Source: Thalia democratica
Taxonomy: Eukaryota
Reading direction: 5' to 3'
Assembly (NCBI GenBank): GCA_965202585.1
Contig: OZ241830.1
Coordinates: 44,702,001-44,766,000, forward strand
Length of the DNA stretch: 64,000 bases
Within the stretch, counting starts at the first letter, position 1; each line of letters begins with the position of its first letter. Positions 2,761 through 55,927 of the stretch are shown in pieces. A program made the position numbers and the translations under genes. The notes beneath the pieces were generated by a model. The model was not told where the DNA came from and searched no databases. It saw only the letters and a program-made list of their open reading frames with translations.

Positions 2761-4074
2761 TATTTGAAGTTAAAATTTTTACTGTTATTTGGTTTAATTT
2801 GATTAGTTTCGAAGTCGCTGTTAACATTTTAAAACAATCAAAAGACTTTACAGCTTTGACTTAATAATGTGAAAAAGACAGATTAGCGTTCAAGCAGTGT
2901 TTTTATTTCAGTTTCATAACAACTTTCTTCTTACAATAGCAGCTTATGATTTAAAAAATAGAGTATTTTTAAACATAAAGTATTTTAAAAAAAGTACTTG
3001 GATTCAGTAAATTGTTTATATAATACCTATTTAGTAAATAAAAAAATACAAATTATTTCCGTTGTGTACAAAATTAATAAGTAATGCAAGTAATCAACTA
3101 GAATTTCATTTTTTTACAATTTAGGTATTTTGTTTAACATGTTATTTATACTAAAGTTTCTCTTATAGATGTTTTATAACTATATGTTTTATTTTAGTGT
3201 ACACAAAAATATTAGAATAAAATACTAATAAGAAATAAGGTTTTTATTATTTTGACTTTTTTTGTGCAACTTCTCTGAAATAACTCCTATGCATACCAAT
3301 GTCCACAGATGTTCACTTTTTAAACAACTTTTTTTATTTCATACTCAAGTTCGATTAAGTGTAGTTTAAGCACAAATTTCTATTACTAATGTTTTAACAT
3401 ATGATATCTAAGTGTGTACAGACACATGTATTAAAATGGTTTTCGTTTACATAAGTTAGAAAACTGTATAAATTAGAGTGCTCAATACATAAAAGCGAAA
3501 GTATCAAATATCAAATTATTAAATATTAAGTATTGTTACTTAAAAAGCTCTGAAGATACTTTTAGGAGAAACAATGTCAGCTAAAGTAGCAATCTTTAAA
3601 CAAAATTTAATAGTTTTTGTTCAGTATATATTTTCTTTTTCAAATAATATTTTTTGGAAAATTAAGTTAATTTTTATACGTTGCATACTAATGAAACTCA
3701 GATACTCTTTTTTGGAACTACCTATTTATTACAAATTGTATTTAAGAAGGTTAATTTATTGATTCTGTTATATTATTAATCAAAATAGTTCAAATTTATG
3801 CAAATAAATAACTAAGCATTGCCACACACTCAGACTAAGTCAGGCTAGTTTGAAGACTTTAAAATCTCATACCAATTTAGGAATTTTTGTGTCAGTTTTT
3901 GGCTTGAAATGCTAAAAATATTGTTTTAAAACAAAATCATATTACCATCGTGTTTTCAGCAATATTTGCAGTAACAACATTGTTTGTGAAAAAAAATTAA
4001 GATCAAAACCCATTAAATTGTTGCGTTGCAACATTGTTTTTAAAATGTCTTTTGTTGTGCTTTGCATTGGAATT

Positions 4075-43689: not shown

Positions 43690-46025
43690 ATTGTTTATGA
43701 ACGATAAAAAAATCGCTCAAGTTTGGTCTAAAGACAAAGGTCTTAAAGTACAAAGGAACCTTTTGGTTAACGAGTCGTACACCACATGCTTATAAAGTTT
43801 CTTACGAGCTGTTACACATAGTTTTTTTAATCATTAAAATATTAAAATCTTTAGTATTAAAACAATCAGTTTGACGAAAAGAAAAATTAAAGAAGTTAAA
43901 ACTAAACGATAGTTAAGTGAATTCTGTGTTTATTAATGTATTATAAATCTTGTTTAGTAACATAAGAACTAAAAATTATATATAACTTTAAATTAACTTT
44001 TAAATTAAGATAAACAACATTAATAACAAACGTGTGAATACTTGAATTATAGTATAACTTTTTTAAAGAAAGTAAAATGAAAAAGCTGAAATACTTTACG
44101 AAATTTTTTTTATAAGTGTTTTGTGCTAAAAAGTTAATTTTTGTTTTGTTAAAAAGTTAACTTGAACAGTAAAAACAATTTTACATTTGAATACTTAAAT
44201 AAACTGTTGTAATTTTTTTTTTTACAATTTTAAAGAAGTGATTTTTACAATAACTGAACTTAACTTTTATAAATGAAAATATGAAGATAAGTACTGTAAA
44301 ATTCATGCTCTTAATAATAAAAAAAAGAAAAAGACAATAATTATTTTAACAATAATGATATCAACAACAACAAATTTCTTTTTATTTTAAAATACACTTT
44401 TCTCTTTTTTTTTTGAATACTTGTCCAAGTCTAAAACTGTAATAATAGAAACTAAGCAACATTTGCAAACATAAAAATAAAGAAATTTTTATTGGCTTTC
44501 CTCAAAAAAAAAAAAGAGATTTTTTAACTTAAGTTTGCTTGAAACAGTTATCTTAGCTTACTTTTAAAATACTTTATTTTCTGCTAAAGTAAAAACATCT
44601 ATAACTATTTTTTACATTTGCATGCTAAAATAAAAAGTTTGTAAGTATTTTGAACTTAATTCAAAATAGTAATCTTAAAGAATAATCTTAAAAAATAACA
44701 AGATATAAAACTCTAAAACCTAGACTAAACCAATATTACTGTAACCAAACAAATCAACTTTCGAACAAAAATAAATAAATAAAAATTTGAAAACTAAATG
44801 ACAATTACTATTAACTCCTTAAACAAAAGTAAATAGACGACTAGGAATGATCACGACCTTGATAATCACTATTTAAAAAATAAATTTTAAGTTCATCCTG
44901 GAACTTTCCAAAATGACTCATATTTTTTTAAACATAATGGTAGCTTCATCCATAACTTACTTCCTTGGTAGGATAGCGATTTATGACCTATTTTGCTGTT
45001 GAATCTAGGTAGGAAAATATTTGTTTCTGAAGACCTCGTACGATAATATTGGACGTTTTTTACACTTTTATAGTAATTTTTAAAGTTATCTGGTAACAAG
45101 TTATTGTTAAACTTAAACATAAGCTGATCTATTTCATAGAGATACAGACTTTCAACACCTTGAATTTTTTTCTGATATTTTAATTCTCTTACACTATCAT
45201 ATTTCTTATAATGTATGCATCTAAGCGCTCTGTTTATGAGAACATTGATATAATTTATACATTTTTTATTTGCTTTTGCCCAGCACAACAAGCCATGTCT
45301 AACATTGCTCATATAAAAAGAATTAAAGATAATGTATAATGCTTTTTCATTTAAGAAGTACCTGGTTTTATATAATACACCCAATAATATTTGTAATTTT
45401 GTTTTTATAGCTTCTATGTGTTCTGTCTATTTTAAGTTTCTATCTAAAATTATTCCCTAGTATTTATAGCTATCTGTGTTTGTTATAACTTTTTTACCTA
45501 TTTTAACATTAAGTTCTATAAATTACTAAAAACTATTTTTGATTGGTGTAGAATCATGCTTCTGGTTTTATTAAGGTATAGTTTAAGTTTGTTTCTCATA
45601 AGCCAATCTGATACCTTTTTTAGTTCTGTGTTTAAATTTTTACTGTCATTTAGGTATGTTTCTTTTGTAAATGTCTTTTATAACATTGTATTTTCTGCAA
45701 AGTTGAGGACTTTAAGACTAGTATTATTTTGTAAGTCATTTATGTGTATTGGGAATAACAACGGTCCTAAAACTGAGTCGTGTGGTACCCCGACCTCACT
45801 ATTTTCACAGGTTGACTCATATCCTACAAAGCTAACGAATTGTTTTCTTTTATCTAAATATGAATTGATTAGTAGATGCATATTTCCTTTCACAACATAA
45901 CATTCTAATTTCCTTAGTAAGATATTTCTATCTACACTATCAAATGCTTTACTTAAATCCGAAAAGACTGCACAAACTGCGTTTCTTTTATCAAAATTGG
46001 ACAGAGCCCCTTCAACAATTCAGAA
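43690..46025 (-). mobile_element. 5'-truncated CR1/L2-group LINE: degenerate RT, ORF2 C-terminus and a long 3' region
   Basis: RT motifs are DLSKAFDSVD, GVPHDSVLGPLLFPIHINDL (GVPQGS..LF..YINDL) and FAENT (FADDT). The C-terminal part is ORF 44893-45384. The 3' region is homologous to 52900-54050. Confidence 0.9.
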
Positions 46026-47575: not shown

Positions 47576-50500
47576 TCATGAAGATGATACAGCTCTGCTG
47601 TAAAAATAATAACAACTTTACAAGTAAAAAGTTTAAACTACAGGACTACCGTTTTTTGCTTCAGTGTTTTTATTTTTTAAAGTTTTAAGAACAATTTAAA
47701 TGATAAATAAAACTATTGTTTTATATTGTAAACGTTTTGTTTTGTACAGAACTATGAATACCATACTTATGATTTAGAGAAAAATATATATACATAACAA
47801 TATTAAGGGCAGTTTAATAAAAATATTCTATGTAGCTAACTTTAAATTAACAGTCTCATGTGTAGAAAATTTTTCTTCCTTAATCAAGCCGTCAAGGTAT
47901 ATTTAAAGAAGCTTAAAACGCGTCTTTAAAGTAAAACATTTTTAATTAATACACTACTTTTTTTAACTTTTATTTTCTCTTTCAAACGTTAAATTCAGAA
48001 AAGATGTTTCTTACTAATAGTTTGTATTCTATCTTTAATAAAACTACACTACAAATGCAAATAAGTATTTTAATTTTAACGAAATATATAACTAGCTAGT
48101 TTTAGTTTCATAAGAGTTTAGTTTCTTGTTATTGTGAAAAATTAGAATAAACATTAAAAAAAACCTTTTAGAAGATACGCGCGCCCTCGTATAAGCAGTT
48201 TCAGACTTGGTGCTTGTGTTGAGTTTTCTGCTGCTTGGTTTACCTGTTACACTTCTACGAACTGTTTCGCTTGCTCTTCTACATTATAAATTCTGTGTTG
48301 TTCTCAAATAATTGTTGAAATGAAAAATAAATAGTGTTGTAAAGCTATTGAAAAACTTATTGTTAATTTTCAAACTCATCAATTGTGTAATACGATTTTA
48401 AAAATTAGTCATGAAAGCAACAAGGAAGTACATTAGGTAGTAAGCTTTCTATTACATGACATAATACAGTAACTTTCGCATTGATCTTCCGTGTATTTAA
48501 TACAAGAGCAAATTAAACTTTATTTGGTTATTTCAAAGAATTAGAAAGTTAATTAGTTAAAAAAATTATTTTAATGAAAAAATTAAAGCTTACGAAGTTA
48601 AAAATTTAACTTGAATTTTAAAAAACATTGAAATAAATTAATAAAACTTTAATTTAACTACAATAAAAATATTGTAATGTATTGCAATAATCTAAAATAG
48701 TACAAAAGTAATGCTTCTTACGATAGATCTAACTGTATACCCGATTTTTTTTCTAAAATTAGTTCCCAAAAAGCTGTAGCATATTGGATTTAATACGGAG
48801 TTTATATACGCGAGAAGCGATGAAAAAATCGTCAAATTTTCACATGAACCTCCCTGTTTGTTTGAAGCAGTAAAAAATTGACTCTTTATAACTTCTGAAA
48901 TTATACTAAACAAAATTCTGTTACAAATTTTATCAGAAATTTTAATTAGTTTTATAGTTTCTGTTATCTAATACTTGAACTATTTTTAAAAAATCAACAG
49001 ACTAGTTTCAGTAACGTTTTAATTACAGAACTAATTTTTTTTAGAAAAATAAATTGTACAATCTTAGTAAAGTAAAAATAAATTGATTAAAAATAATAAA
49101 GGTTTATGTATGAAATAACCATTTAAATTTGTCTCAAAATTACATGCATTAACATGTTACCTGCATGTAAGGCAGACCCTTTATTTTGGTCAGGTGTATA
49201 ATGTGGAATGGCAGCCAGCAAATGATGAAGGTGGAAACCAGGAGTGCCGACATCAGGGTCACCTTGTTCCTCACTTTCGCCTGCCTGCCTCCTGACACTC
49301 CTCCTGAAAACTTCACTTTTTTGATGATCATGCCGTACGTTGCAATCATTGCCTTCGTATAAATGTTTTAAAATGTGAATTGAAAATAATTTAAAACATC
49401 AACGTAAGGCATTATTTACAAGCTTCCTTTGAAAAAAAAACTGACTTAAACAGCTTGAATAAATGTTATTTAAAAAAGTTTTCAAGCATTTGGTTTAGTG
49501 TTAAACTTCTAAGCAGTAAAAAGAAAAGTATAAGTAAGCTAAAAAATGTAAATAGTAAAATTACCAATACTGGAAAAATGTATAAAACTATGAAGTTTGT
49601 GTACAGAAATTTGTGCCATCGCTTTGGAGAATTTCTGTAGTGACAGTTTATACTTTGAATGTACAACAGATCATCCTCAGAACCTTCTGTGGTATTGCCA
49701 TTTTCTGGTAAATAATCACCACTAGGGTCAAATTCATCTTCCCATTTGCTCGAATAGTACGACTCCTCCTCGTCGATAAATGTCAGATTGCTTGAAATTG
49801 AGGTCATGTTTTTTGTTAAATTAATTTCAGTAGAGTTGTTATTTTTAGTATTTCTATTCGTATCATTTTCTGAGGAATAATAACTGTAATAGTCTCCTAG
49901 TTCTTCATAGTAGTCTGGATAGCTGTCACTGCAAATAGTTAATTATTTTGGTTTTAAGAATAATTATTTTTAAAAGTAAATAAAGTTTAAAACAACTTGT
50001 ATATTAAAAACTAAAACGTGGATAACATTTTACTAACCTAATTTTATTATACCTTTGATATTTTTTGATCACTTTGTAATAATCATATGAACTTAAACTT
50101 ACCTAACGCGTAGCTTCACATGCTTAAGACATGTAAGAGGGACGACGATGCAAGGCGGGGTCGACAAGTTTAAACGTGAATAGTTAAATGTTAGTCTCTA
50201 AGCAGATGATAAACAAGCTTAATTGTCTATTACTACATAGAACTTAAGTTTTAAAAAGGTTTCAAGAACAGTAAACAGCTTCGAAAATAAAAATAAAAAC
50301 CTAAGTATAAAACAACATTGATAAGCTGTTGGAAGAACAATATGTATCACTTTGAAAAAAATGAAACTCACCTGTAATGATCTTGGTGTACTAATTAAGT
50401 ACACCTCAAAATCAGGAGTTTCCTTAAGCCAATCGTCTTATTTCAAAATAAAAAATTATAAAGTAGCCGTGCATTTGTTACTTGTATTTCTGCGCAGCTT

Positions 50501-53500
50501 AATTTAGTTATATGTCTAAATCAGGGATCGGCAGCCTGATGTTACTCGCGCGCCTATTTTCCTAGGAAAAATTGCTCGCAGACCGCACTATTTAGAAAAA
50601 ACCTTTGAGGGCCGCATTTATTTTAAAAAAATTCTGGTAATCAGTAGAAAAATATTATTTAAGATCAAAAATATGACAATTTAAGCAATATTAGAGCATT
50701 AATAAAGAGTACTTATTGAATTAAGAGCCTAACTGTAAGTTTTTATTACAAAAAATATAACTTTTATTGTTTTTAAAATGTATATTTTCGGCTGAAAGTA
50801 GCTCGTGGGCCGCAGATTTTAACTTTGAGGGCCGCATTTGGCCCGAGGGCCGCAGTTTGCCGACCCTTGGTCTAAAATAATCGTGAAGCTGATTATTTAT
50901 AATTTGAAAATAAGCAATAAAAATTATTTTAACTAATATTAAGTGCATAACAACGATAGACTAAAAATTGAATGTTACAAGTAACATACATAACAAAACA
51001 ATCATTTTAGAACAATATATTAAACGTACACTAAAAATCATTACATTTTTCTGTTTAAATATACGATTTTCCAAGCAATAAAAAACTTAAAACAGTTTAC
51101 TTCAGCCTGAATAAACCATCTCCGATAGTCCGTCAGAACCTAAAACTCGAAGTATACTGTTAGAGCAAAACCTGTAACCATCCGCCCAACTATTAAAAGC
51201 AAGTATTATTAAAACTTGTTATTCTAATTAGGAAAGCTATTTAAGTATTTTTTTTTCTTCAAGTCTTACGAACTACCGACTCTTAAATGCCGTACTAAAC
51301 TTGCGTAGAATCTAAAACATACAGTAACAAAGTTATAATAAGGTACGCATCAACTTTAGCTTTAGTTGAGAGTTCAGACACGATGTTAGTTAGCTTCCAA
51401 TAAAATGCACATGTAACTAACTTTTTGAGTGAATCAATTTTTTCAACTAGATAACACTTTTATCAGCAAAAAAGAAACTATACTCAGTTGTTAAAAGTAA
51501 AGTAGAAATACAAGGCTGTTAATAAAAAAACAAAGTAATCTAAAATTCAATTTAACTTAAATAAAAGCTAGTGTAATTTTAATTATAACTATGTTTTAAA
51601 ACAAACCTACAAATTCTTCCATCGTCTTGTGCTTGTATGCTGTGTTCAAGGCACGTTGAAATTTGAGTTTCCGAGGTGTAACCAACTTCTTTACAAACAT
51701 TTATCAGCTCATGATACTCTTTTTTAAAGTTAAACCTAAAAAGTAAAACGTCTTTTCTAACACACCTAAGTTTTTGCAATTCTAAACATAAGAATTAAAA
51801 GTTTATTAAAGTAACAGAAAATAATATTATTACTCTTTATAAAAACTTAGTCAAAAAAAAATATAAGATGTAATTAAAAAGAATTACTTTCAAAGACAAA
51901 CAGCAACTTCAATAAAGATTTATCTTATTAATTTTTTGTACAAAAAGTTTATTTATAGTTTTAATACGATCATGTTCAAAGTTATCTAAATTGATATTTT
52001 TATTGATTATAGTTTTTGTTTCACATTAATTAAAAATTGTTATAATGTGTGCTTAAATAACTAACTGACAAAAACATTCTGGTTTAGTACCAACTACTTG
52101 AGTATTTTGCATTACCGGAAGACATATAAGTAAAGAAACTATCCACGTAAGACATATAGTTAATATTGCTGGCTTTGTTTTTCTCCATTTTCCAAGAAAT
52201 TTATTAAAAGGCTGACAAACAGCAATGTACCTATCAATGCTCATTATCTGCATTTTTTTTAGTTTTTGTTGCTTTTAATTTTATAAGAAACAATAAGTTT
52301 AGAACTTTAATTTTTGTTTTTTTCTATACTGCATATAAAAAAGCATAAACAGTACAGTAGTAGAACGTTATGAAACTATAAAAACAAAACTACAAAAAAC
52401 ATTGGGTGTATTATATAAAACCAGACATTTCTTAAGTGAAAACCCATTATACTTGATCGTTAATTATTTGCTTATGAGCAATGTTAGACATAGCTTGTTG
52501 TGCTGGGGAAAAGCAAACAAAAAATGTATAAATTATATCAATGTTCTCATAAACAGAGCACTTAGATACATACAGTATAAGAAATATGATGATAGTGTAA
52601 GAGAATTAAAAACTCAGAAAAAAATATTAGATGTTGAAAGTCTGTATCTATACAAATTAGGTCTGTTTATGTTTAAGTTTTATAATTTGTTACCAAATAA
52701 CTTTACTAACTATTATAAAAAAAATAAAAAAATGTCCATAATTGTCATACGATGTCTTCAGAAACCATTTTTTTCCTACCTAGATTCAACAGCTAAATAG
52801 GTCATAAATCGCTATCCTTACAAAGAAGTAAGTTATGAATCAAGCTATCATTATGTTTAAAAATATGAGTCATTTTGGAAAGTTCCAGGATGAACATAAA
52901 AGTTATCTATTAAAAAATTACTAATAAGGTCATTAGTGATCATTGCTACTCGTCTATTTACTTTTGTTTAAGGAGCTAATAGTATTTGTCGTTTAATAAC
53001 CAACTTTTTTTTATTTACTTTGTTTTTTTTGTTCAAAAGTTGATTTGTTTGGTTACATTAACAGTGGTTGAGTATAGATTGCAGCATTTTCTATCTGGTT
53101 ATTCTTTAGAATATTCTTTAAGATTACTATTATGAATTAAGTTCAGAATACTTACAAACTTTTTTTTTGTTTTTTTTTAGCACACCAATGTAAAAAAATA
53201 GTTATAGATATATATACTTTAACAGAAAATTAAATATTTAAATAGTAGGCTGAGATAATTTTTTCAAACAAACTTATGTTTTAAAATTTATCTTTTTATG
53301 GAAATCAAAAAAAAAACTCTTCTTTTTCATATTTACAAATATTGTTTGCCTTCTTTGTTTACAGTTTTAGATTTAGGCAAGTATTCAAAACATAAAAAAT
53401 TAAATTTTAAAACAAAAAGAAATTTGTTTTATTTTTTACTCATTTAAAACATAAGTTTTACAGTACTTATCTTTATATTTTCATATATAAAAATTTAGTT

Positions 53501-55927
53501 ATGTTATGGTAGAATTCACATCTTAAAATTTTTTTAAAATTATACAATAATTTATTTATCTAATCGAATGTAAAATTATTTTTATTGTTCAAGTAAAGTT
53601 ATTTAATAAAACAAAGACTACACTTTAATCACAAAATACTGATAGAATTAAACGTAAAAATATTTCAGAGTATTACATTTTTACTTTCTTTAAAGAGGCT
53701 GTAACCTAGCATTCAAGTATTCACGTAATTGCTATTAGTACTGTTATATCCTTTTATAATTTAATATAAAGTCATATCTATACTTTTAGTTCTTATATTA
53801 CTAAACAAGTTTTTAAGTACATTTTTAAATAAAAATTTCAGTTAATTACGTTAGTTTTCTTTTCTTTTATTTCTTTTAATTGATTTTTTCATTACTAAAG
53901 ATTTCAATATTTAAATGGTAAAAACTATTTATAATAGCTCGTAAGAAATTTTATAAGCATGTGGTGTACGACTCGATAACTGAAAGGTTCCTTTGTACAT
54001 CAGTTCCTTAGACCAAACTTTTTGAGCGCTTTTTTTATCTTTCAATAAAAAAACTTTTTAGACTGTAAAAAAAACTTTGTCAAAGTTGTTTAACTTTGAG
54101 TTTAGTTATTTTAGTAATTTTTTTTTCTTTTAAAGAACTGTATTTAATACCCGAAACAAATTGTTTTAGTCATTATTTAACTTTTGTTTTAATTGAATTA
54201 AATAAATAAATCCTTACAGTTTTTTTTTTCTAATTTTGGAAGACTATTTTGTATAAATGTATCAACCTTAAACTCCTTAAATAGTATATGAATACAAAAC
54301 TATTAAATAATGAATAATAATATAAAAGCTTACTACTAAAAAGAAAACTGAGGCGTTGTAATTCAGAAAAAGAATAGTCTCTTTTACACTACAGAGCGAA
54401 TTTCCAAAAGGCCACGATCCATGAAAATCCTCACTTACTTTAAATGGAATTGTCAACAAAAACAAAATGTCAGCAAACGCTAGTTGTAAAACATACCTAA
54501 AACGCATAATTTTTGTAAGTTTGTGATCAATTTTCTTCTAGAAGTTTTAGAAAATGTTTATTAGATTAAATGCAGTATGTAAAAAAACATTAAATACTTT
54601 AAATAACGTCAAAACTTAAAATTTTTGAAACAAATAAGTTTGTCTATAAGATGAACTAGAAATACTGTTTTATATTTCAATTTGTGTTAGTTCTCTGAAT
54701 TAATTTAAAGAACCTTAAACTAACTTTTTTAAAAGAAACATGTTTTTCTCACAGTTTTAATATCTTTAAAAACTTATAAAGTTTTAAAAAAAATCCCAAC
54801 TAAATTTGAACGAGTTTTTTGCTGATATTCGTAAGATATAATAAAGACAAACAATGTCACACTTTTGCTTTATCAAAAGTCAAATTAAAAGTAGTTTATT
54901 TAAATTTTGGACACTATTTAAACTTTGACGTTAGTTAAAGTATTTTACGTTTCTTGTACTTTCTACATTTAACCTAATCATTTTCTAAAAATTTTGATTT
55001 TTTTGATAAAGCAAAAGTGTCACATTGTTTGTCTTTATTACGAATATCAGCAGATAACTCGTTCAAATTTAGTATGGATTTTTTTTTTTGAGCTTTATAA
55101 ACTTTTAAAGATATCATAACTGTTAGAAGAACATGTTTGCTTCCAAAAAATTTAGTTTAGGTCCTCTAGATTTTTTTTTTAGTTGTCTACATAAAATTAA
55201 AACAACTTGAAATATAATTTAGTGTTTTTAGTTCATCTTATAGACAAACTTATTTGTTTCAAACAAGTTTCAACAACAAAACTTAAATATAAGTATAGAT
55301 ATCTTAGTACATAATATACAAAACCAATTTACTTACATGTGTAACACAGACTTCTTATATTCTTTTAGAACAACAATCACAAAAATACTGACCAAGTTTG
55401 CAATAACTCCAATGATGCATACAATAATAGAAATTGATACTTTTCCTAGGTTAACTGAAAATACATTTTAAAATTTTTACTTTATTACTTTGATTTAGTT
55501 TATTTTTGAAAACCACTTTTTATATTTCTGCCTAAAAAGCATAATTTCTACAGTTTAAACTAAACCTATAGTAAATTTGTTCTTCATTTTTTGTTAACAA
55601 AAATATAATTCAAATAATTCTGGAAATCTATCAGTTTTCTTAGTATTTAACAAACATCTCTTTTTAAGTTTCTTTCAAAAAAATAATAAATATTTCTAAA
55701 AAGGGCCTTAAAATAATTATGCTTGATTTTAGGTCGTAAGTTATTCTTAACAGAAACGGTAAATTGCATAGTATACATTTTGAATAAAATTTAAGGAAAA
55801 GTAAATTATTTAATAACTCGTTTTATTTAATAAATATTTATTCAAATATTTTTATTTTTTCTTATATACAATACTATATTATGAAACACATACCTTTAGG
55901 TTCTGCTTGTGAATCATCATAATTCAT
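47576..55927 (-). CDS. Class A (rhodopsin-family) peptide-type GPCR of the somatostatin/opioid/galanin-chemokine-related group, about 476 aa, with a very long ECL2
   Basis: Phase-consistent GT-AG exons: 55927-55894, 55454-55337, 54496-54334, 52247-52066, 51735-51607, 49928-49565, 49352-49161, 48853-48741, 48278-48165, 47597-47576 (the last two are less certain). Motifs are TM1 GVIAN, TM2 LAFAD..TIPF, ECL1 WPFG..LC, DRY, TM4 W...LP, TM5 IFP, TM6 CWLPF and TM7 NSVLNPICY. Confidence 0.9.
50522..50869. mobile_element. Complete hAT/Charlie MITE in a GPCR intron
   Basis: CAGGGATCGGCAG ... TTTGCCGACCCTTG, with TSD gtctaaat/gtctaaaa (7/8) and GGGCCGCA subterminal repeats. Confidence 0.88.
52350..54050 (+). 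mobile_element. Second, shorter copy of the CR1/L2-group LINE, in GPCR intron 3 and antisense to the gene
   Basis: ORF 52402-52800 (GVLYKTRHFL...VRHSLLCWGKANKKCINYINVLINRAL) is nearly the same as 44893-45384. About 1.15 kb of downstream non-coding sequence is also shared. Confidence 0.9.

What the first reader, a model, noticed from the sequence alone, without database searches (positions are those of the whole stretch)
49565..52100. GPCR with a ~16-aa N-terminus and a ~160-aa ECL2 built from a Cys-rich module plus an acidic Tyr-rich glycosylated stalk
Seen: the N-terminus is only MNYDDSQAEPKVNLGK. ECL2 (about residues 152-312) has six Cys, three of them in a separate 129-nt phase-2/phase-2 exon (51735-51607). 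It has acidic Tyr clusters (DSYPDYYEELGDYYSYYSSE, DEEESYY, DPSGDY) and seven N-x-S/T sequons. Established: chemokine receptors bind protein ligands via sulfotyrosines in the N-terminus, and C3aR has a very long ECL2 with a functional sulfotyrosine. Inference: the ligand-capture domain has moved from the N-terminus into ECL2, possibly with a novel small disulfide-bonded fold.
Basis: partly seen in the sequence, partly recalled or inferred. Interest (0 to 1): 0.7.

Follow-up and report, generated by a model that had tools for sequence, protein, structure and literature searches.

The report
Tunicate orphan GPCR with giant loop
This is a real, intact receptor gene from a family found only in sea squirts and their relatives. 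All members carry a very long, acidic, tyrosine-rich outer loop. One member has already been published as a putative complement C3a/C5a receptor, so the gene is a new member of a little-studied known family, not a new kind of receptor.

Summary
A 10-exon, 476-aa rhodopsin-class GPCR lies on the minus strand (55927-47576). It has a 16-aa N-terminus and a 161-aa ECL2 with six Cys, three of them in a 129-nt phase-2/2 exon. The loop carries 11 Tyr in an acidic stalk (net charge -18) and seven sequons.

No reads could be laid on the window. Five marine metatranscriptome contigs of a sister species (89% aa identity) do show exactly this splicing, exon 5 included. They also have in-frame stops just before the ATG.

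The interpretation needs correcting in four ways:
- **Family trait.** The loop is shared by at least 48 tunicate GPCRs (ECL2 74-239 aa, against 21-31 aa in outgroups), whatever their N-terminal length (0-98 aa). Nothing "moved".
- **Position of the insert.** The canonical Cys45.50 is the second Cys of the CxC. The roughly 135-aa insert lies after it, where C3aR has its own insert.
- **Age of the exon.** The Cys-module exon is also a separate exon in the ascidian Clavelina.
- **Prior publication.** Botryllus BsC3a/C5aR (Peronato 2020) belongs to this family, and its large acidic loop was noted there. No ligand has been shown.

Most likely mechanism, inferred: a folded, disulfide-stapled cap plus a sulfated acidic tether captures a basic protein or peptide ligand.

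Verdict: new member of a known kind, of moderate interest.

The parts
55894..55927 (-). Exon 1: start codon and the first 11 codons (MNYDDSQAEPK) plus one base; donor GT
   Evidence: Sister cDNA maps here. The sister 5'UTR has in-frame stops before the ATG.
55337..55454 (-). Exon 2: rest of the N-terminus, TM1 and ICL1 (LKEYKKSVLH family motif)
54334..54496 (-). Exon 3: TM2, ECL1, Cys3.25 (C86) and most of TM3
   Evidence: Pfam 7tm_1 E=1.7e-11.
52066..52247 (-). Exon 4: end of TM3 with DRY, ICL2, TM4 and the ECL2 beta-hairpin ending in CFC. C165 is Cys45.50.
   Evidence: Pfam 7tm_1 E=6.7e-10. The HMM alignment to SSTR2 puts the second Cys of the CxC on the canonical ECL2 Cys, and so does the outgroup alignment.
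51607..51735 (-). Exon 5: 129 nt, phase 2/2, 43 codons. It holds the three-Cys module (C180, C194, C208), predicted as a helical hairpin.
   Evidence: Present in all five sister cDNAs. A separate exon also in Clavelina. pLDDT 85-88 within the full-length model. dN/dS 0.42.
49565..49928 (-). Exon 6: acidic, Tyr-rich, sequon-rich stalk (residues 210-303, predicted disordered), the extra Cys304 (INCHY), and the first half of TM5
   Evidence: 76% identical to sister P0001.
49161..49352 (-). Exon 7: second half of TM5, short ICL3 and TM6 (CWLPFH). Unusually GC-rich (GC3 0.66).
   Evidence: Pfam 7tm_1.
48741..48853 (-). Exon 8: ECL3 with the family-invariant Cys398, TM7 (NPxxY) and the start of helix 8
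   Evidence: The acceptor was fixed by the sister cDNA. Cys398 is invariant in 48/48 family members and absent from the outgroups.
48165..48278 (-). Exon 9: Ser/Thr/Arg-rich C-terminal tail
47576..47597 (-). Exon 10: last seven codons and the stop

Best explanation
The gene encodes an intact, selectively maintained, orphan class-A (gamma-rhodopsin group) GPCR. It belongs to a tunicate-specific clade that the literature knows as ascidian 'C3a/C5aR-like' or 'unclassified chemokine-receptor-cluster-like' receptors.

The hallmark of the clade is an insert of about 50-215 aa in the C-terminal arm of ECL2, immediately after the canonical Cys45.50 (the second Cys of a CxC). In this gene the insert has three parts:
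- a folded cap, made of the usual ECL2 beta-hairpin followed by a helical hairpin with three Cys, encoded by its own ancient 129-nt exon;
- a disordered stalk of about 90 aa, strongly acidic, with 11 Tyr and 7 sequons;
- a further Cys just before TM5.

Together with an invariant ECL3 Cys, the extracellular face has eight Cys, enough for four disulfides. One of these probably ties ECL2 to ECL3.

Inferred mechanism (about 40% likely): the stalk tyrosines are sulfated by the genome's TPST enzymes. The stalk then acts as a flexible polyanionic 'site 1' that captures a basic protein or large peptide ligand, whose tip activates the 7TM core. This two-site mode is analogous to C3aR (ECL2 sulfotyrosine) and to chemokine receptors (N-terminal sulfotyrosines).

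Shown: the gene structure, expression of the orthologue, family membership, conservation, the position of the insert, and the presence of TPST genes. Inferred: sulfation, disulfide pairing, ligand class and signalling.
For: - Gene model with canonical splice sites.
- Orthologous cDNAs with identical splicing in at least 3 metatranscriptome samples.
- Purifying selection: dN/dS 0.07 outside ECL2 and 0.36 inside it. All six loop Cys and all 11 stalk Tyr are conserved.
- 7tm_1 domains and the class-A microswitches D2.50, DRY, CWxP and NPxxY.
- The tunicate clade of 48 is monophyletic (SH-aLRT 96) and includes Botryllus BsC3a/C5aR, P0084.
- The BsC3a/C5aR TM1-TM2 segment is 60% identical to P0014, against 31% for human C3aR.
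- Family ECL2 is 74-239 aa against 21-31 aa in outgroups. Cys165 aligns with the outgroups' Cys45.50. Cys304 is in 46/48 and Cys398 in 48/48 family members, and both are absent from outgroups.
- AF2: ECL2 150-210 at pLDDT 85-88 (hairpin plus two helices); 212-298 below 50.
- Ten of the 11 stalk Tyr have no basic residue or His within 5 positions on either side of one or both of themselves, and all 11 have 2-4 acidic neighbours.
- Two TPST genes in the genome.
- The published view that the acidic ECL2 of ascidian members resembles the C3a-binding loop of C3aR (PMC7565592).
Against:
- No ligand is known for any family member. The Botryllus paper shows expression and an agonist effect on C3 transcription, not binding.
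- The module alone folds poorly (pLDDT 56), so it may not be an autonomous domain.
- Only about half of the sequons are conserved in the sister, and the stalk is disordered. It could be a spacer rather than a binding site.
- This gene has Phe, not Tyr, at the position of human C3aR Tyr174.
Confidence: 0.55

Rival explanations
1. It is an anaphylatoxin (C3a/C5a-type) receptor, an orthologue in function of vertebrate C3aR. The acidic ECL2 binds the basic core of the organism's own C3a fragment.
For: - A family member is published as BsC3a/C5aR. It is expressed in morula-cell immunocytes and has a large acidic ECL2 (PMC7565592; P0084).
- The insert follows Cys45.50 with a C-x-Y-x-F motif, as in human C3aR.
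- Foldseek ranks C3aR among the top 30 Swiss-Prot models.
- A quick tree puts the clade next to PTGDR2-type chemoattractant receptors (SH-aLRT 89).
Against: - The family profile scores SSTR and opioid receptors at 212-182 bits, and no C3aR or C5aR chain reaches the top 60.
- An AU test does not reject grouping with SSTR/opioid instead (p=0.55).
- The published tree contained no SSTR or opioid sequences.
- The window gene lies in a different, pelagic-lineage subclade from BsC3a/C5aR.
- The genome holds at least 36 related loci, far more than the expected number of C3a-type ligands.
- The Tyr174 equivalent is Phe here.
- No binding assay exists for any member.
Confidence: 0.1
2. The loop is not the ligand-capture site. 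The folded module is a structural lid over the pocket, or a self-capping or tethered modulator. The acidic glycosylated stalk is a mucin-like spacer under weak constraint. The true ligand is a short peptide or small molecule bound in the 7TM pocket.
For: - The stalk is predicted disordered.
- It evolves about five times faster than the core.
- Its length varies from 74 to 239 aa across the family, and only some sequons are conserved.
- Family-specific pocket residues K3.28, E3.29 and H6.52 are well conserved, which suggests a pocket-bound ligand.
- ECL2 capping of the pocket is known in SSTR5 (PMC12745778, abstract seen).
Against: - dN/dS of the loop is 0.36, clearly below 1.
- All 11 stalk tyrosines and their acidic context are conserved at dS of about 0.3-0.46.
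- Acidity and Tyr enrichment recur across 48 paralogues despite the lack of alignable sequence. That points to selection on composition, as for sulfated capture regions.
Confidence: 0.25
3. It is a chemosensory or environmental-cue receptor from a lineage-specific expansion. The variable loop diversifies recognition of external molecules, not endogenous hormones.
For: - At least 36 loci, with tandem clusters at C8:7.36-7.53 Mb and C2:26.35-26.53 Mb.
- An all-pelagic subclade of 8 sequences.
- A fast-evolving extracellular loop.
Against: - No expression data place it in sensory tissue.
- The 7TM core is very strongly conserved between the sister species (97% aa identity).
- The one studied member is expressed in immunocytes (PMC7565592).
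Confidence: 0.1

Closest known systems
Botryllus schlosseri BsC3a/C5aR and the ascidian 'putative anaphylatoxin receptors' Ciona R3/R4 and Halocynthia R (Peronato, Franchi & Ballarin 2020, PMC7565592). Probably also the 12 'unclassified chemokine receptor cluster-like' GPCRs of Ciona (Kamesh et al. 2008, PMC2396169).
   Same: The same tunicate clade. Shared features are the LKEY(K/R)KS ICL1 motif, YVLQLA.AD in TM2, a Cys45.50 followed by a long acidic insert, a Cys before TM5, an ECL3 Cys, and multi-exon genes.
   Different: It lies in a different subclade (pelagic-lineage expansion). Its ECL2 is longer (161 aa against 99). It has the full CxC plus a three-Cys module, where BsC3a/C5aR has 5 loop Cys. 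It has Phe instead of Tyr two residues after Cys45.50. Expression and function are unknown.
Vertebrate C3a receptor (C3AR1)
   Same: A gamma-group class-A GPCR with an ECL2 of about 170 aa inserted after Cys45.50. The loop is acidic, and a sulfotyrosine is needed for ligand binding (as cited in PMC7565592). The overall fold is similar.
   Different: Only about 31% identity in TM1-TM2. No C3aR chain is in the top 60 profile hits. C3aR lacks the CxC, the three-Cys helical module, the pre-TM5 Cys and the ECL3 Cys. Orthology is unresolved.
Somatostatin and opioid receptors (SSTR1-5, MOR, DOR, KOR, NOP)
   Same: They are the best sequence and fold matches: 212-182 bits to the family profile and Foldseek TM-score by target 0.83-0.89. 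They share DRYIAVCH, CW.P.H and N3.35.
   Different: Their ECL2 is 25-31 aa. The ligand-anchoring Asp3.32 of opioid receptors is Leu in 40/48 family members. No true SSTR orthologue was found in Ciona (PMC3560075). NCBI's 'somatostatin receptor type 2-like' names are automatic.
Chemokine receptors (CCR, CXCR, ACKR)
   Same: A two-site logic with a polyanionic sulfotyrosine region. An extra extracellular disulfide involves an ECL3/TM7 Cys. ACKR3 and CCR6 are among the good matches to exon 3.
   Different: In chemokine receptors the sulfated region and the partner Cys are in the N-terminus. Here the N-terminus is 16 aa with no Cys, and the candidate partners lie in ECL2. Classical chemokine receptors are absent from Ciona (PMC2396169).

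Membership tests
Rhodopsin-class (class A) GPCR, Pfam 7tm_1 | Seven TM helices with D2.50, the C3.25-C45.50 pair, D/ERY, CWxP and NPxxY | tested here: met
   7tm_1 over its cut-off on exons 3, 4 and 7. All the motifs are present. The AF2 7TM bundle has pTM 0.70. Foldseek finds GPCRs at E of about 1e-13.
Tunicate long-ECL2 clade (BsC3a/C5aR-like) | Monophyly with the ascidian members, including BsC3a/C5aR | tested here: met
   48 tunicate sequences form one clade, SH-aLRT 96. The window gene is nested inside it, and P0084 (Botryllus) is also inside.
Tunicate long-ECL2 clade (BsC3a/C5aR-like) | A long acidic insert after Cys45.50, plus an extra Cys before TM5 and an ECL3 Cys | tested here: met
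   ECL2 is 161 aa with D+E 30 against K+R 12. C165 is Cys45.50. C304 and C398 are present, in 46/48 and 48/48 of the family and in none of the outgroups.
Tunicate long-ECL2 clade (BsC3a/C5aR-like) | The three-Cys module encoded by its own exon | tested here: met
   Window exon 5 is 129 nt; the Clavelina P0014 gene has a 138-nt exon with the same limits. C180, C194 and C208 are present in 40-42 of 48 members.
C3a/C5a anaphylatoxin receptors | Orthology with vertebrate C3AR1/C5AR1 | tested here: inconclusive
   A quick tree places the clade beside PTGDR2-type receptors (SH-aLRT 89, with a long-branch warning). An AU test equally allows grouping with SSTR/opioid (p=0.55). Profile scores favour SSTR/opioid. 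No C3aR or C5aR sequence could be brought into the tree.
C3a/C5a anaphylatoxin receptors | Tyr two residues after Cys45.50 (human Tyr174, sulfated, needed for C3a binding) | tested here: not met
   Phe167 in the window protein and in its sister; Tyr in 30/48 family members. The role of Tyr174 is as cited in PMC7565592.
C3a/C5a anaphylatoxin receptors | Binds and responds to C3a or C5a | not testable with these tools
   No binding data exist for any family member. PMC7565592 reports expression and an agonist effect on C3 transcription only.
Somatostatin / opioid receptors | Asp3.32 anchoring the cationic group of the ligand (opioid receptors), and a short ECL2 hairpin | tested here: not met
   Position 3.32 is Leu93, and Leu in 40/48 of the family, against Asp in MOR and DOR. 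ECL2 is 161 aa against 26-31 aa. That Asp3.32 is the ligand anchor is from general knowledge.
Chemokine receptors | A sulfotyrosine-bearing N-terminus, with an N-terminal Cys bonded to the ECL3/TM7 Cys | tested here: not met
   The N-terminus is 16 aa with one Tyr and no Cys. An ECL3 Cys is present.

The most novel reading that the evidence does not exclude
The whole clade is the tunicate counterpart of vertebrate chemokine and chemoattractant receptors. On this reading it arose before, or in parallel with, those receptors, and it uses a sulfated ECL2 tether in place of the N-terminus as 'site 1'. A disulfide-stapled helical cap links ECL2 to ECL3. The lineage-specific expansions (at least 36 loci here) and the fast-evolving loops would then reflect co-evolution with an undiscovered family of small basic secreted proteins, in effect tunicate 'chemokines'.
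Probability: 0.15. Interest if true: 0.7.

Novelty: new member of a known kind. Interest (0 to 1): 0.35.

Why it matters
Tunicates are the sister group of vertebrates, yet they lack classical chemokine receptors and true somatostatin receptors. A tunicate-wide, repeatedly expanded receptor clade whose defining feature is a C3aR-like acidic, Tyr-rich ECL2 insert bears on how two-site protein-ligand recognition arose in chordate gamma-group GPCRs. It also bears on whether the published 'C3a/C5aR' label for one member is justified.

This gene itself adds little beyond another member. The useful by-products are:
- the insert lies after Cys45.50;
- the extracellular face has a conserved eight-Cys framework;
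- the module exon is ancient;
- the relationship to C3aR as opposed to SSTR/opioid receptors is unresolved.

Tried and rejected
- **Reads on the window.** There is therefore no direct RNA evidence. Those places were masked in my local BLAST and sent to no search tool. One marine metatranscriptome run holds 9% of the sampled words of the locus, but it could not be inspected.
- **Paralogues of the loop.** Searches of the own genome with exon 6 and exon 5 found no second copy of this loop. The one weak exon-5 hit on C5 (E=0.88) was not followed up.
- **First organism guess.** From the 25% GC content I first guessed a cnidarian such as Hydra. I rejected this once the nearest named homologues were all tunicates.
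- **First Cys45.50 guess.** I first took the 'INCHY' Cys to be Cys45.50. The HMM alignment and the outgroup alignment rejected this.
- **Profile search.** A search with alignment A1 added no new members.
- **Module alone.** AF2 of the Cys module on its own gave pLDDT 56. That is too poor for a meaningful fold search, so none was run, and the novelty of the fold is untested.
- **Ciona deorphanisation paper (PMC6475428).** Its receptors are described as unrelated to known peptide GPCRs, and the text mentions neither somatostatin nor opioid receptors. Its supplements were not available, so identity with this family could not be excluded by sequence.
- **CiC3aR of Melillo 2006 (Ciona R1, 848 aa).** In the published alignment it lacks the family motifs and looks like a different protein.
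- **Pseudogene or annotation artefact.** Rejected on the intact ORF, dN/dS 0.07 in the core, and the orthologous transcripts.
- **Complex prediction.** Not used. There is no specific ligand candidate, and the prior that this paralogue binds C3a is low.

Full report
**1. What is in the sequence**

Reading 47.5-56 kb on the minus strand and assembling the open frames gives a 10-exon, 476-aa gene with GT-AG at every intron. The exons are 55927-55894, 55454-55337, 54496-54334, 52247-52066, 51735-51607, 49928-49565, 49352-49161, 48853-48741, 48278-48165 and 47597-47576.

Pfam 7tm_1 matches exons 3, 4, 7 and 8.
- The N-terminus is MNYDDSQAEPKVNLGK.
- ECL2 spans residues 152-312, with Cys at 163, 165, 180, 194, 208 and 304.
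- The middle three Cys sit in the 129-nt, phase-2/phase-2 exon 5.
- The three quoted Tyr clusters are present.
- There are seven sequons, two of them overlapping.
- The stalk 210-303 is 11.7% Tyr, 23% Asp+Glu and 13% Asn, with net charge -18. The rest of the protein is 3.8% Tyr.

**2. Is the model real?**

I could not lay reads. I kept those places out of every later search.

A library-wide phmmer search with exon 6 found P0001, a 474-aa protein 76% identical over the exon. P0001 and four near-identical variants come from contigs of 1.5-1.7 kb in marine metatranscriptomes: JGI 3300018695, JGI 3300018893 and Logan ERR1719317. These contigs are therefore spliced mRNAs of a sister species.

The cDNA maps piece by piece onto the window at exactly my exon limits. 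It also maps at 98-99% onto L051, a sister genomic contig with the same exon-intron structure, the 129-nt exon included. The cDNA fixed the exon-8 acceptor and revealed exons 9 and 10.

The sister mRNA has TAG TAA in frame two codons before the ATG, so the 16-aa N-terminus is genuine there. In the window the homologous 5' stretch has no in-frame stop, so the same start rests on conservation.

**3. Selection**

Against the sister cDNA:

| Region | dN/dS | aa identity |
|---|---|---|
| TM1-TM4 | 0.05 | 97% |
| TM5-helix 8 | 0.04 | 97% |
| All of the protein outside ECL2 | 0.07 | 96% |
| ECL2 as a whole | 0.36 | 74% |
| Exon 5 | 0.42 | 67% |
| Stalk | 0.30 | 72% |

The loop is therefore constrained, but several-fold less than the core. 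All six loop Cys and all 11 stalk Tyr are conserved. Only about half of the sequons are.

**4. What family is it?**

Named homologues are all tunicate proteins, from Clavelina, Phallusia, Styela and Ciona. They carry automatic names such as 'somatostatin receptor type 2-like' or 'kappa-type opioid receptor-like', and there are further marine transcripts. The organism is therefore a tunicate. Because the sister's transcripts come from ocean plankton samples it is probably pelagic, but that is an inference.

In a 58-sequence tree the 48 tunicate sequences form one clade (SH-aLRT 96). The window gene sits in an eight-member subclade made only of plankton-derived sequences. The window's own genome has at least 36 loci with a full-length exon-4 match, several of them in tandem clusters.

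**5. The loop is a family trait**

Across the 48 members:
- ECL2 is 74-239 aa, against 21-31 aa in the opioid, SSTR-like, PTGDR2 and aminergic outgroups.
- It is always acidic: D+E 9-30 against K+R 3-16.
- It usually has six Cys (36 of 48 members).
- N-termini range from 0 to 98 aa.
- Several members combine the loop with a Tyr/acid-rich N-terminus (P0021, P0060, P0019).

So nothing has 'moved' from the N-terminus. This gene simply has a short N-terminus.

The module exon is old. In the Clavelina gene for P0014 the same segment, from just after the CxC to just after the third module Cys, is a separate 138-nt exon.

**6. Anatomy of the insert**

The family profile aligned to SSTR2 puts the second Cys of the CxC on the canonical ECL2 Cys. 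It resumes at the Trp just before TM5. The multiple alignment with outgroups agrees. Three points follow:
- Cys165 is Cys45.50.
- The insert of about 135 aa follows it.
- Cys304 ('INCHY') is an extra, family-specific Cys (46/48), as is Cys398 in ECL3 (48/48, absent from all outgroups).

Most members thus have eight extracellular Cys. Members lacking two module Cys still have an even number. That fits full disulfide pairing, with one bond between ECL2 and ECL3. The pairing itself is inferred, because I had no access to model coordinates.

AlphaFold2 was run on the sister orthologue with the 17-sequence alignment, giving mean pLDDT 74.7 and pTM 0.70:
- Residues 154-167 form a beta-hairpin.
- Residues 173-182 and 188-205 form two helices, at pLDDT 85-88.
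- Residues 212-298 fall below 50.

The module folded alone reaches only pLDDT 56. It probably needs the receptor surface, and I ran no fold search on it.

**7. Relation to known receptors**

By sequence and fold the best matches are somatostatin and opioid receptors. The top 60 profile hits in the PDB are all SSTR or opioid/NOP, at 212-182 bits. However, Asp3.32 is Leu in 40 of 48 members, and K3.28/E3.29 are family-specific. Ocampo Daza et al. found no true SSTR in Ciona (PMC3560075).

The literature already touches this family:
- Kamesh et al. 2008 list 12 'unclassified chemokine receptor cluster-like' GPCRs in Ciona (PMC2396169).
- Peronato et al. 2020 describe Botryllus BsC3a/C5aR and the related Ciona R3/R4 and Halocynthia sequences. 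[quoted passage not shown]

BsC3a/C5aR is P0084 in my search and falls inside the clade. Its TM1-TM2 segment is 60% identical to Clavelina P0014, against 31% for human C3aR.

Their tree contained no SSTR or opioid receptors, and no ligand binding was shown. In my tree the clade sits beside PTGDR2-type receptors (SH-aLRT 89, with a long-branch warning). An AU test accepts the alternative grouping with SSTR/opioid equally well (p=0.55). The C3aR orthology is therefore unresolved.

The window protein has Phe at the Tyr174-equivalent position.

**8. How it most likely works**

Two bona fide TPST genes are in the genome. Ten of the 11 stalk Tyr have no basic residue or His within five positions, and all 11 have 2-4 acidic residues in that range. 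That is the classical context for tyrosine sulfation, as I know it from the general literature.

The best-supported reading is a two-site receptor. A disulfide-stapled cap carries a flexible, sulfated, glycosylated polyanionic tether that catches a basic protein or large peptide. The ligand then engages the 7TM core. This works like C3aR and, with a different topology, like chemokine receptors.

I put the odds as follows:
- About 40% on this mechanism.
- About 25% on the loop being mainly a lid or spacer.
- About 10% on C3a itself as the ligand of this paralogue.
- About 10% on a chemosensory role.

**9. Verdict**

It is wrong on the evolutionary story.

The kind is already known, if barely characterised, so this is a new member of a known kind. 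The modest new points are:
- the position of the insert relative to Cys45.50;
- the eight-Cys framework, including an invariant ECL3 Cys;
- the conserved module exon;
- the size of the family in a pelagic tunicate.

Noticed in passing
window 49161-49352 (exon 7): Exon 7 has GC3 0.66 (GC 0.48), against 0.09-0.36 in the other nine exons. The sister cDNA shows the same (0.59). The nearest paralogues have 0.24-0.43, but a distant paralogue on C10 (L048) has 0.84. The intron before exon 7 lies inside TM5, whereas paralogues L045-L049 have it in ICL3. This may be an old exon replacement or gene conversion.
   Followed up: partly
window about 50540-50880 (intron 5): A GC-rich insert of about 340 bp with inverted-repeat-like ends and internal repeats of 'aaatgcggccctcaaag', in an otherwise 25% GC intron. 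It looks like a MITE and may be related to the transposon family noted elsewhere in this window.
   Followed up: no
window 52402-52800 (+), inside intron 3; and 44893-45384 (-): Two open frames that are about 70% alike (MGVLYKTR.FL...LLCW.KANKKCINYINVLINRALR...). They look like C-terminal fragments of a LINE-type retrotransposon protein. One lies inside the GPCR gene's intron 3.
   Followed up: no
G000:C9:18004286-18009293 (+) and G000:C8:36252344-36257168 (-); loci L053-L057: Two protein-tyrosine sulfotransferase (TPST) genes in the same genome. Their first exons match human TPST1 and TPST2 at E of about 1e-21.
   Followed up: partly
G000:C8:7.36-7.53 Mb, C2:26.35-26.53 Mb, C8:52.47-52.53 Mb and C5:66.58-66.61 Mb: Tandem clusters of paralogues of this GPCR: at least 36 loci with a full-length exon-4 match. 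A separate array of about 25 exon-7-like hits lies at C8:36.98-37.47 Mb. It has no exon-4 match and is probably another GPCR family.
   Followed up: partly
L051 about 3405-3411; L060, L061, L062 positions 1-32: The three longest sister transcripts, all from one sample, begin at the last base of a genomic ttttAG acceptor 32 nt upstream of the ATG. This suggests a trans-spliced leader or an upstream non-coding exon trimmed in assembly.
   Followed up: no
L059 2830-2967 (Clavelina lepadiformis genome, gene of P0014): The three-Cys ECL2 module is a separate 138-nt exon in this ascidian too, with the same limits as window exon 5.
   Followed up: yes
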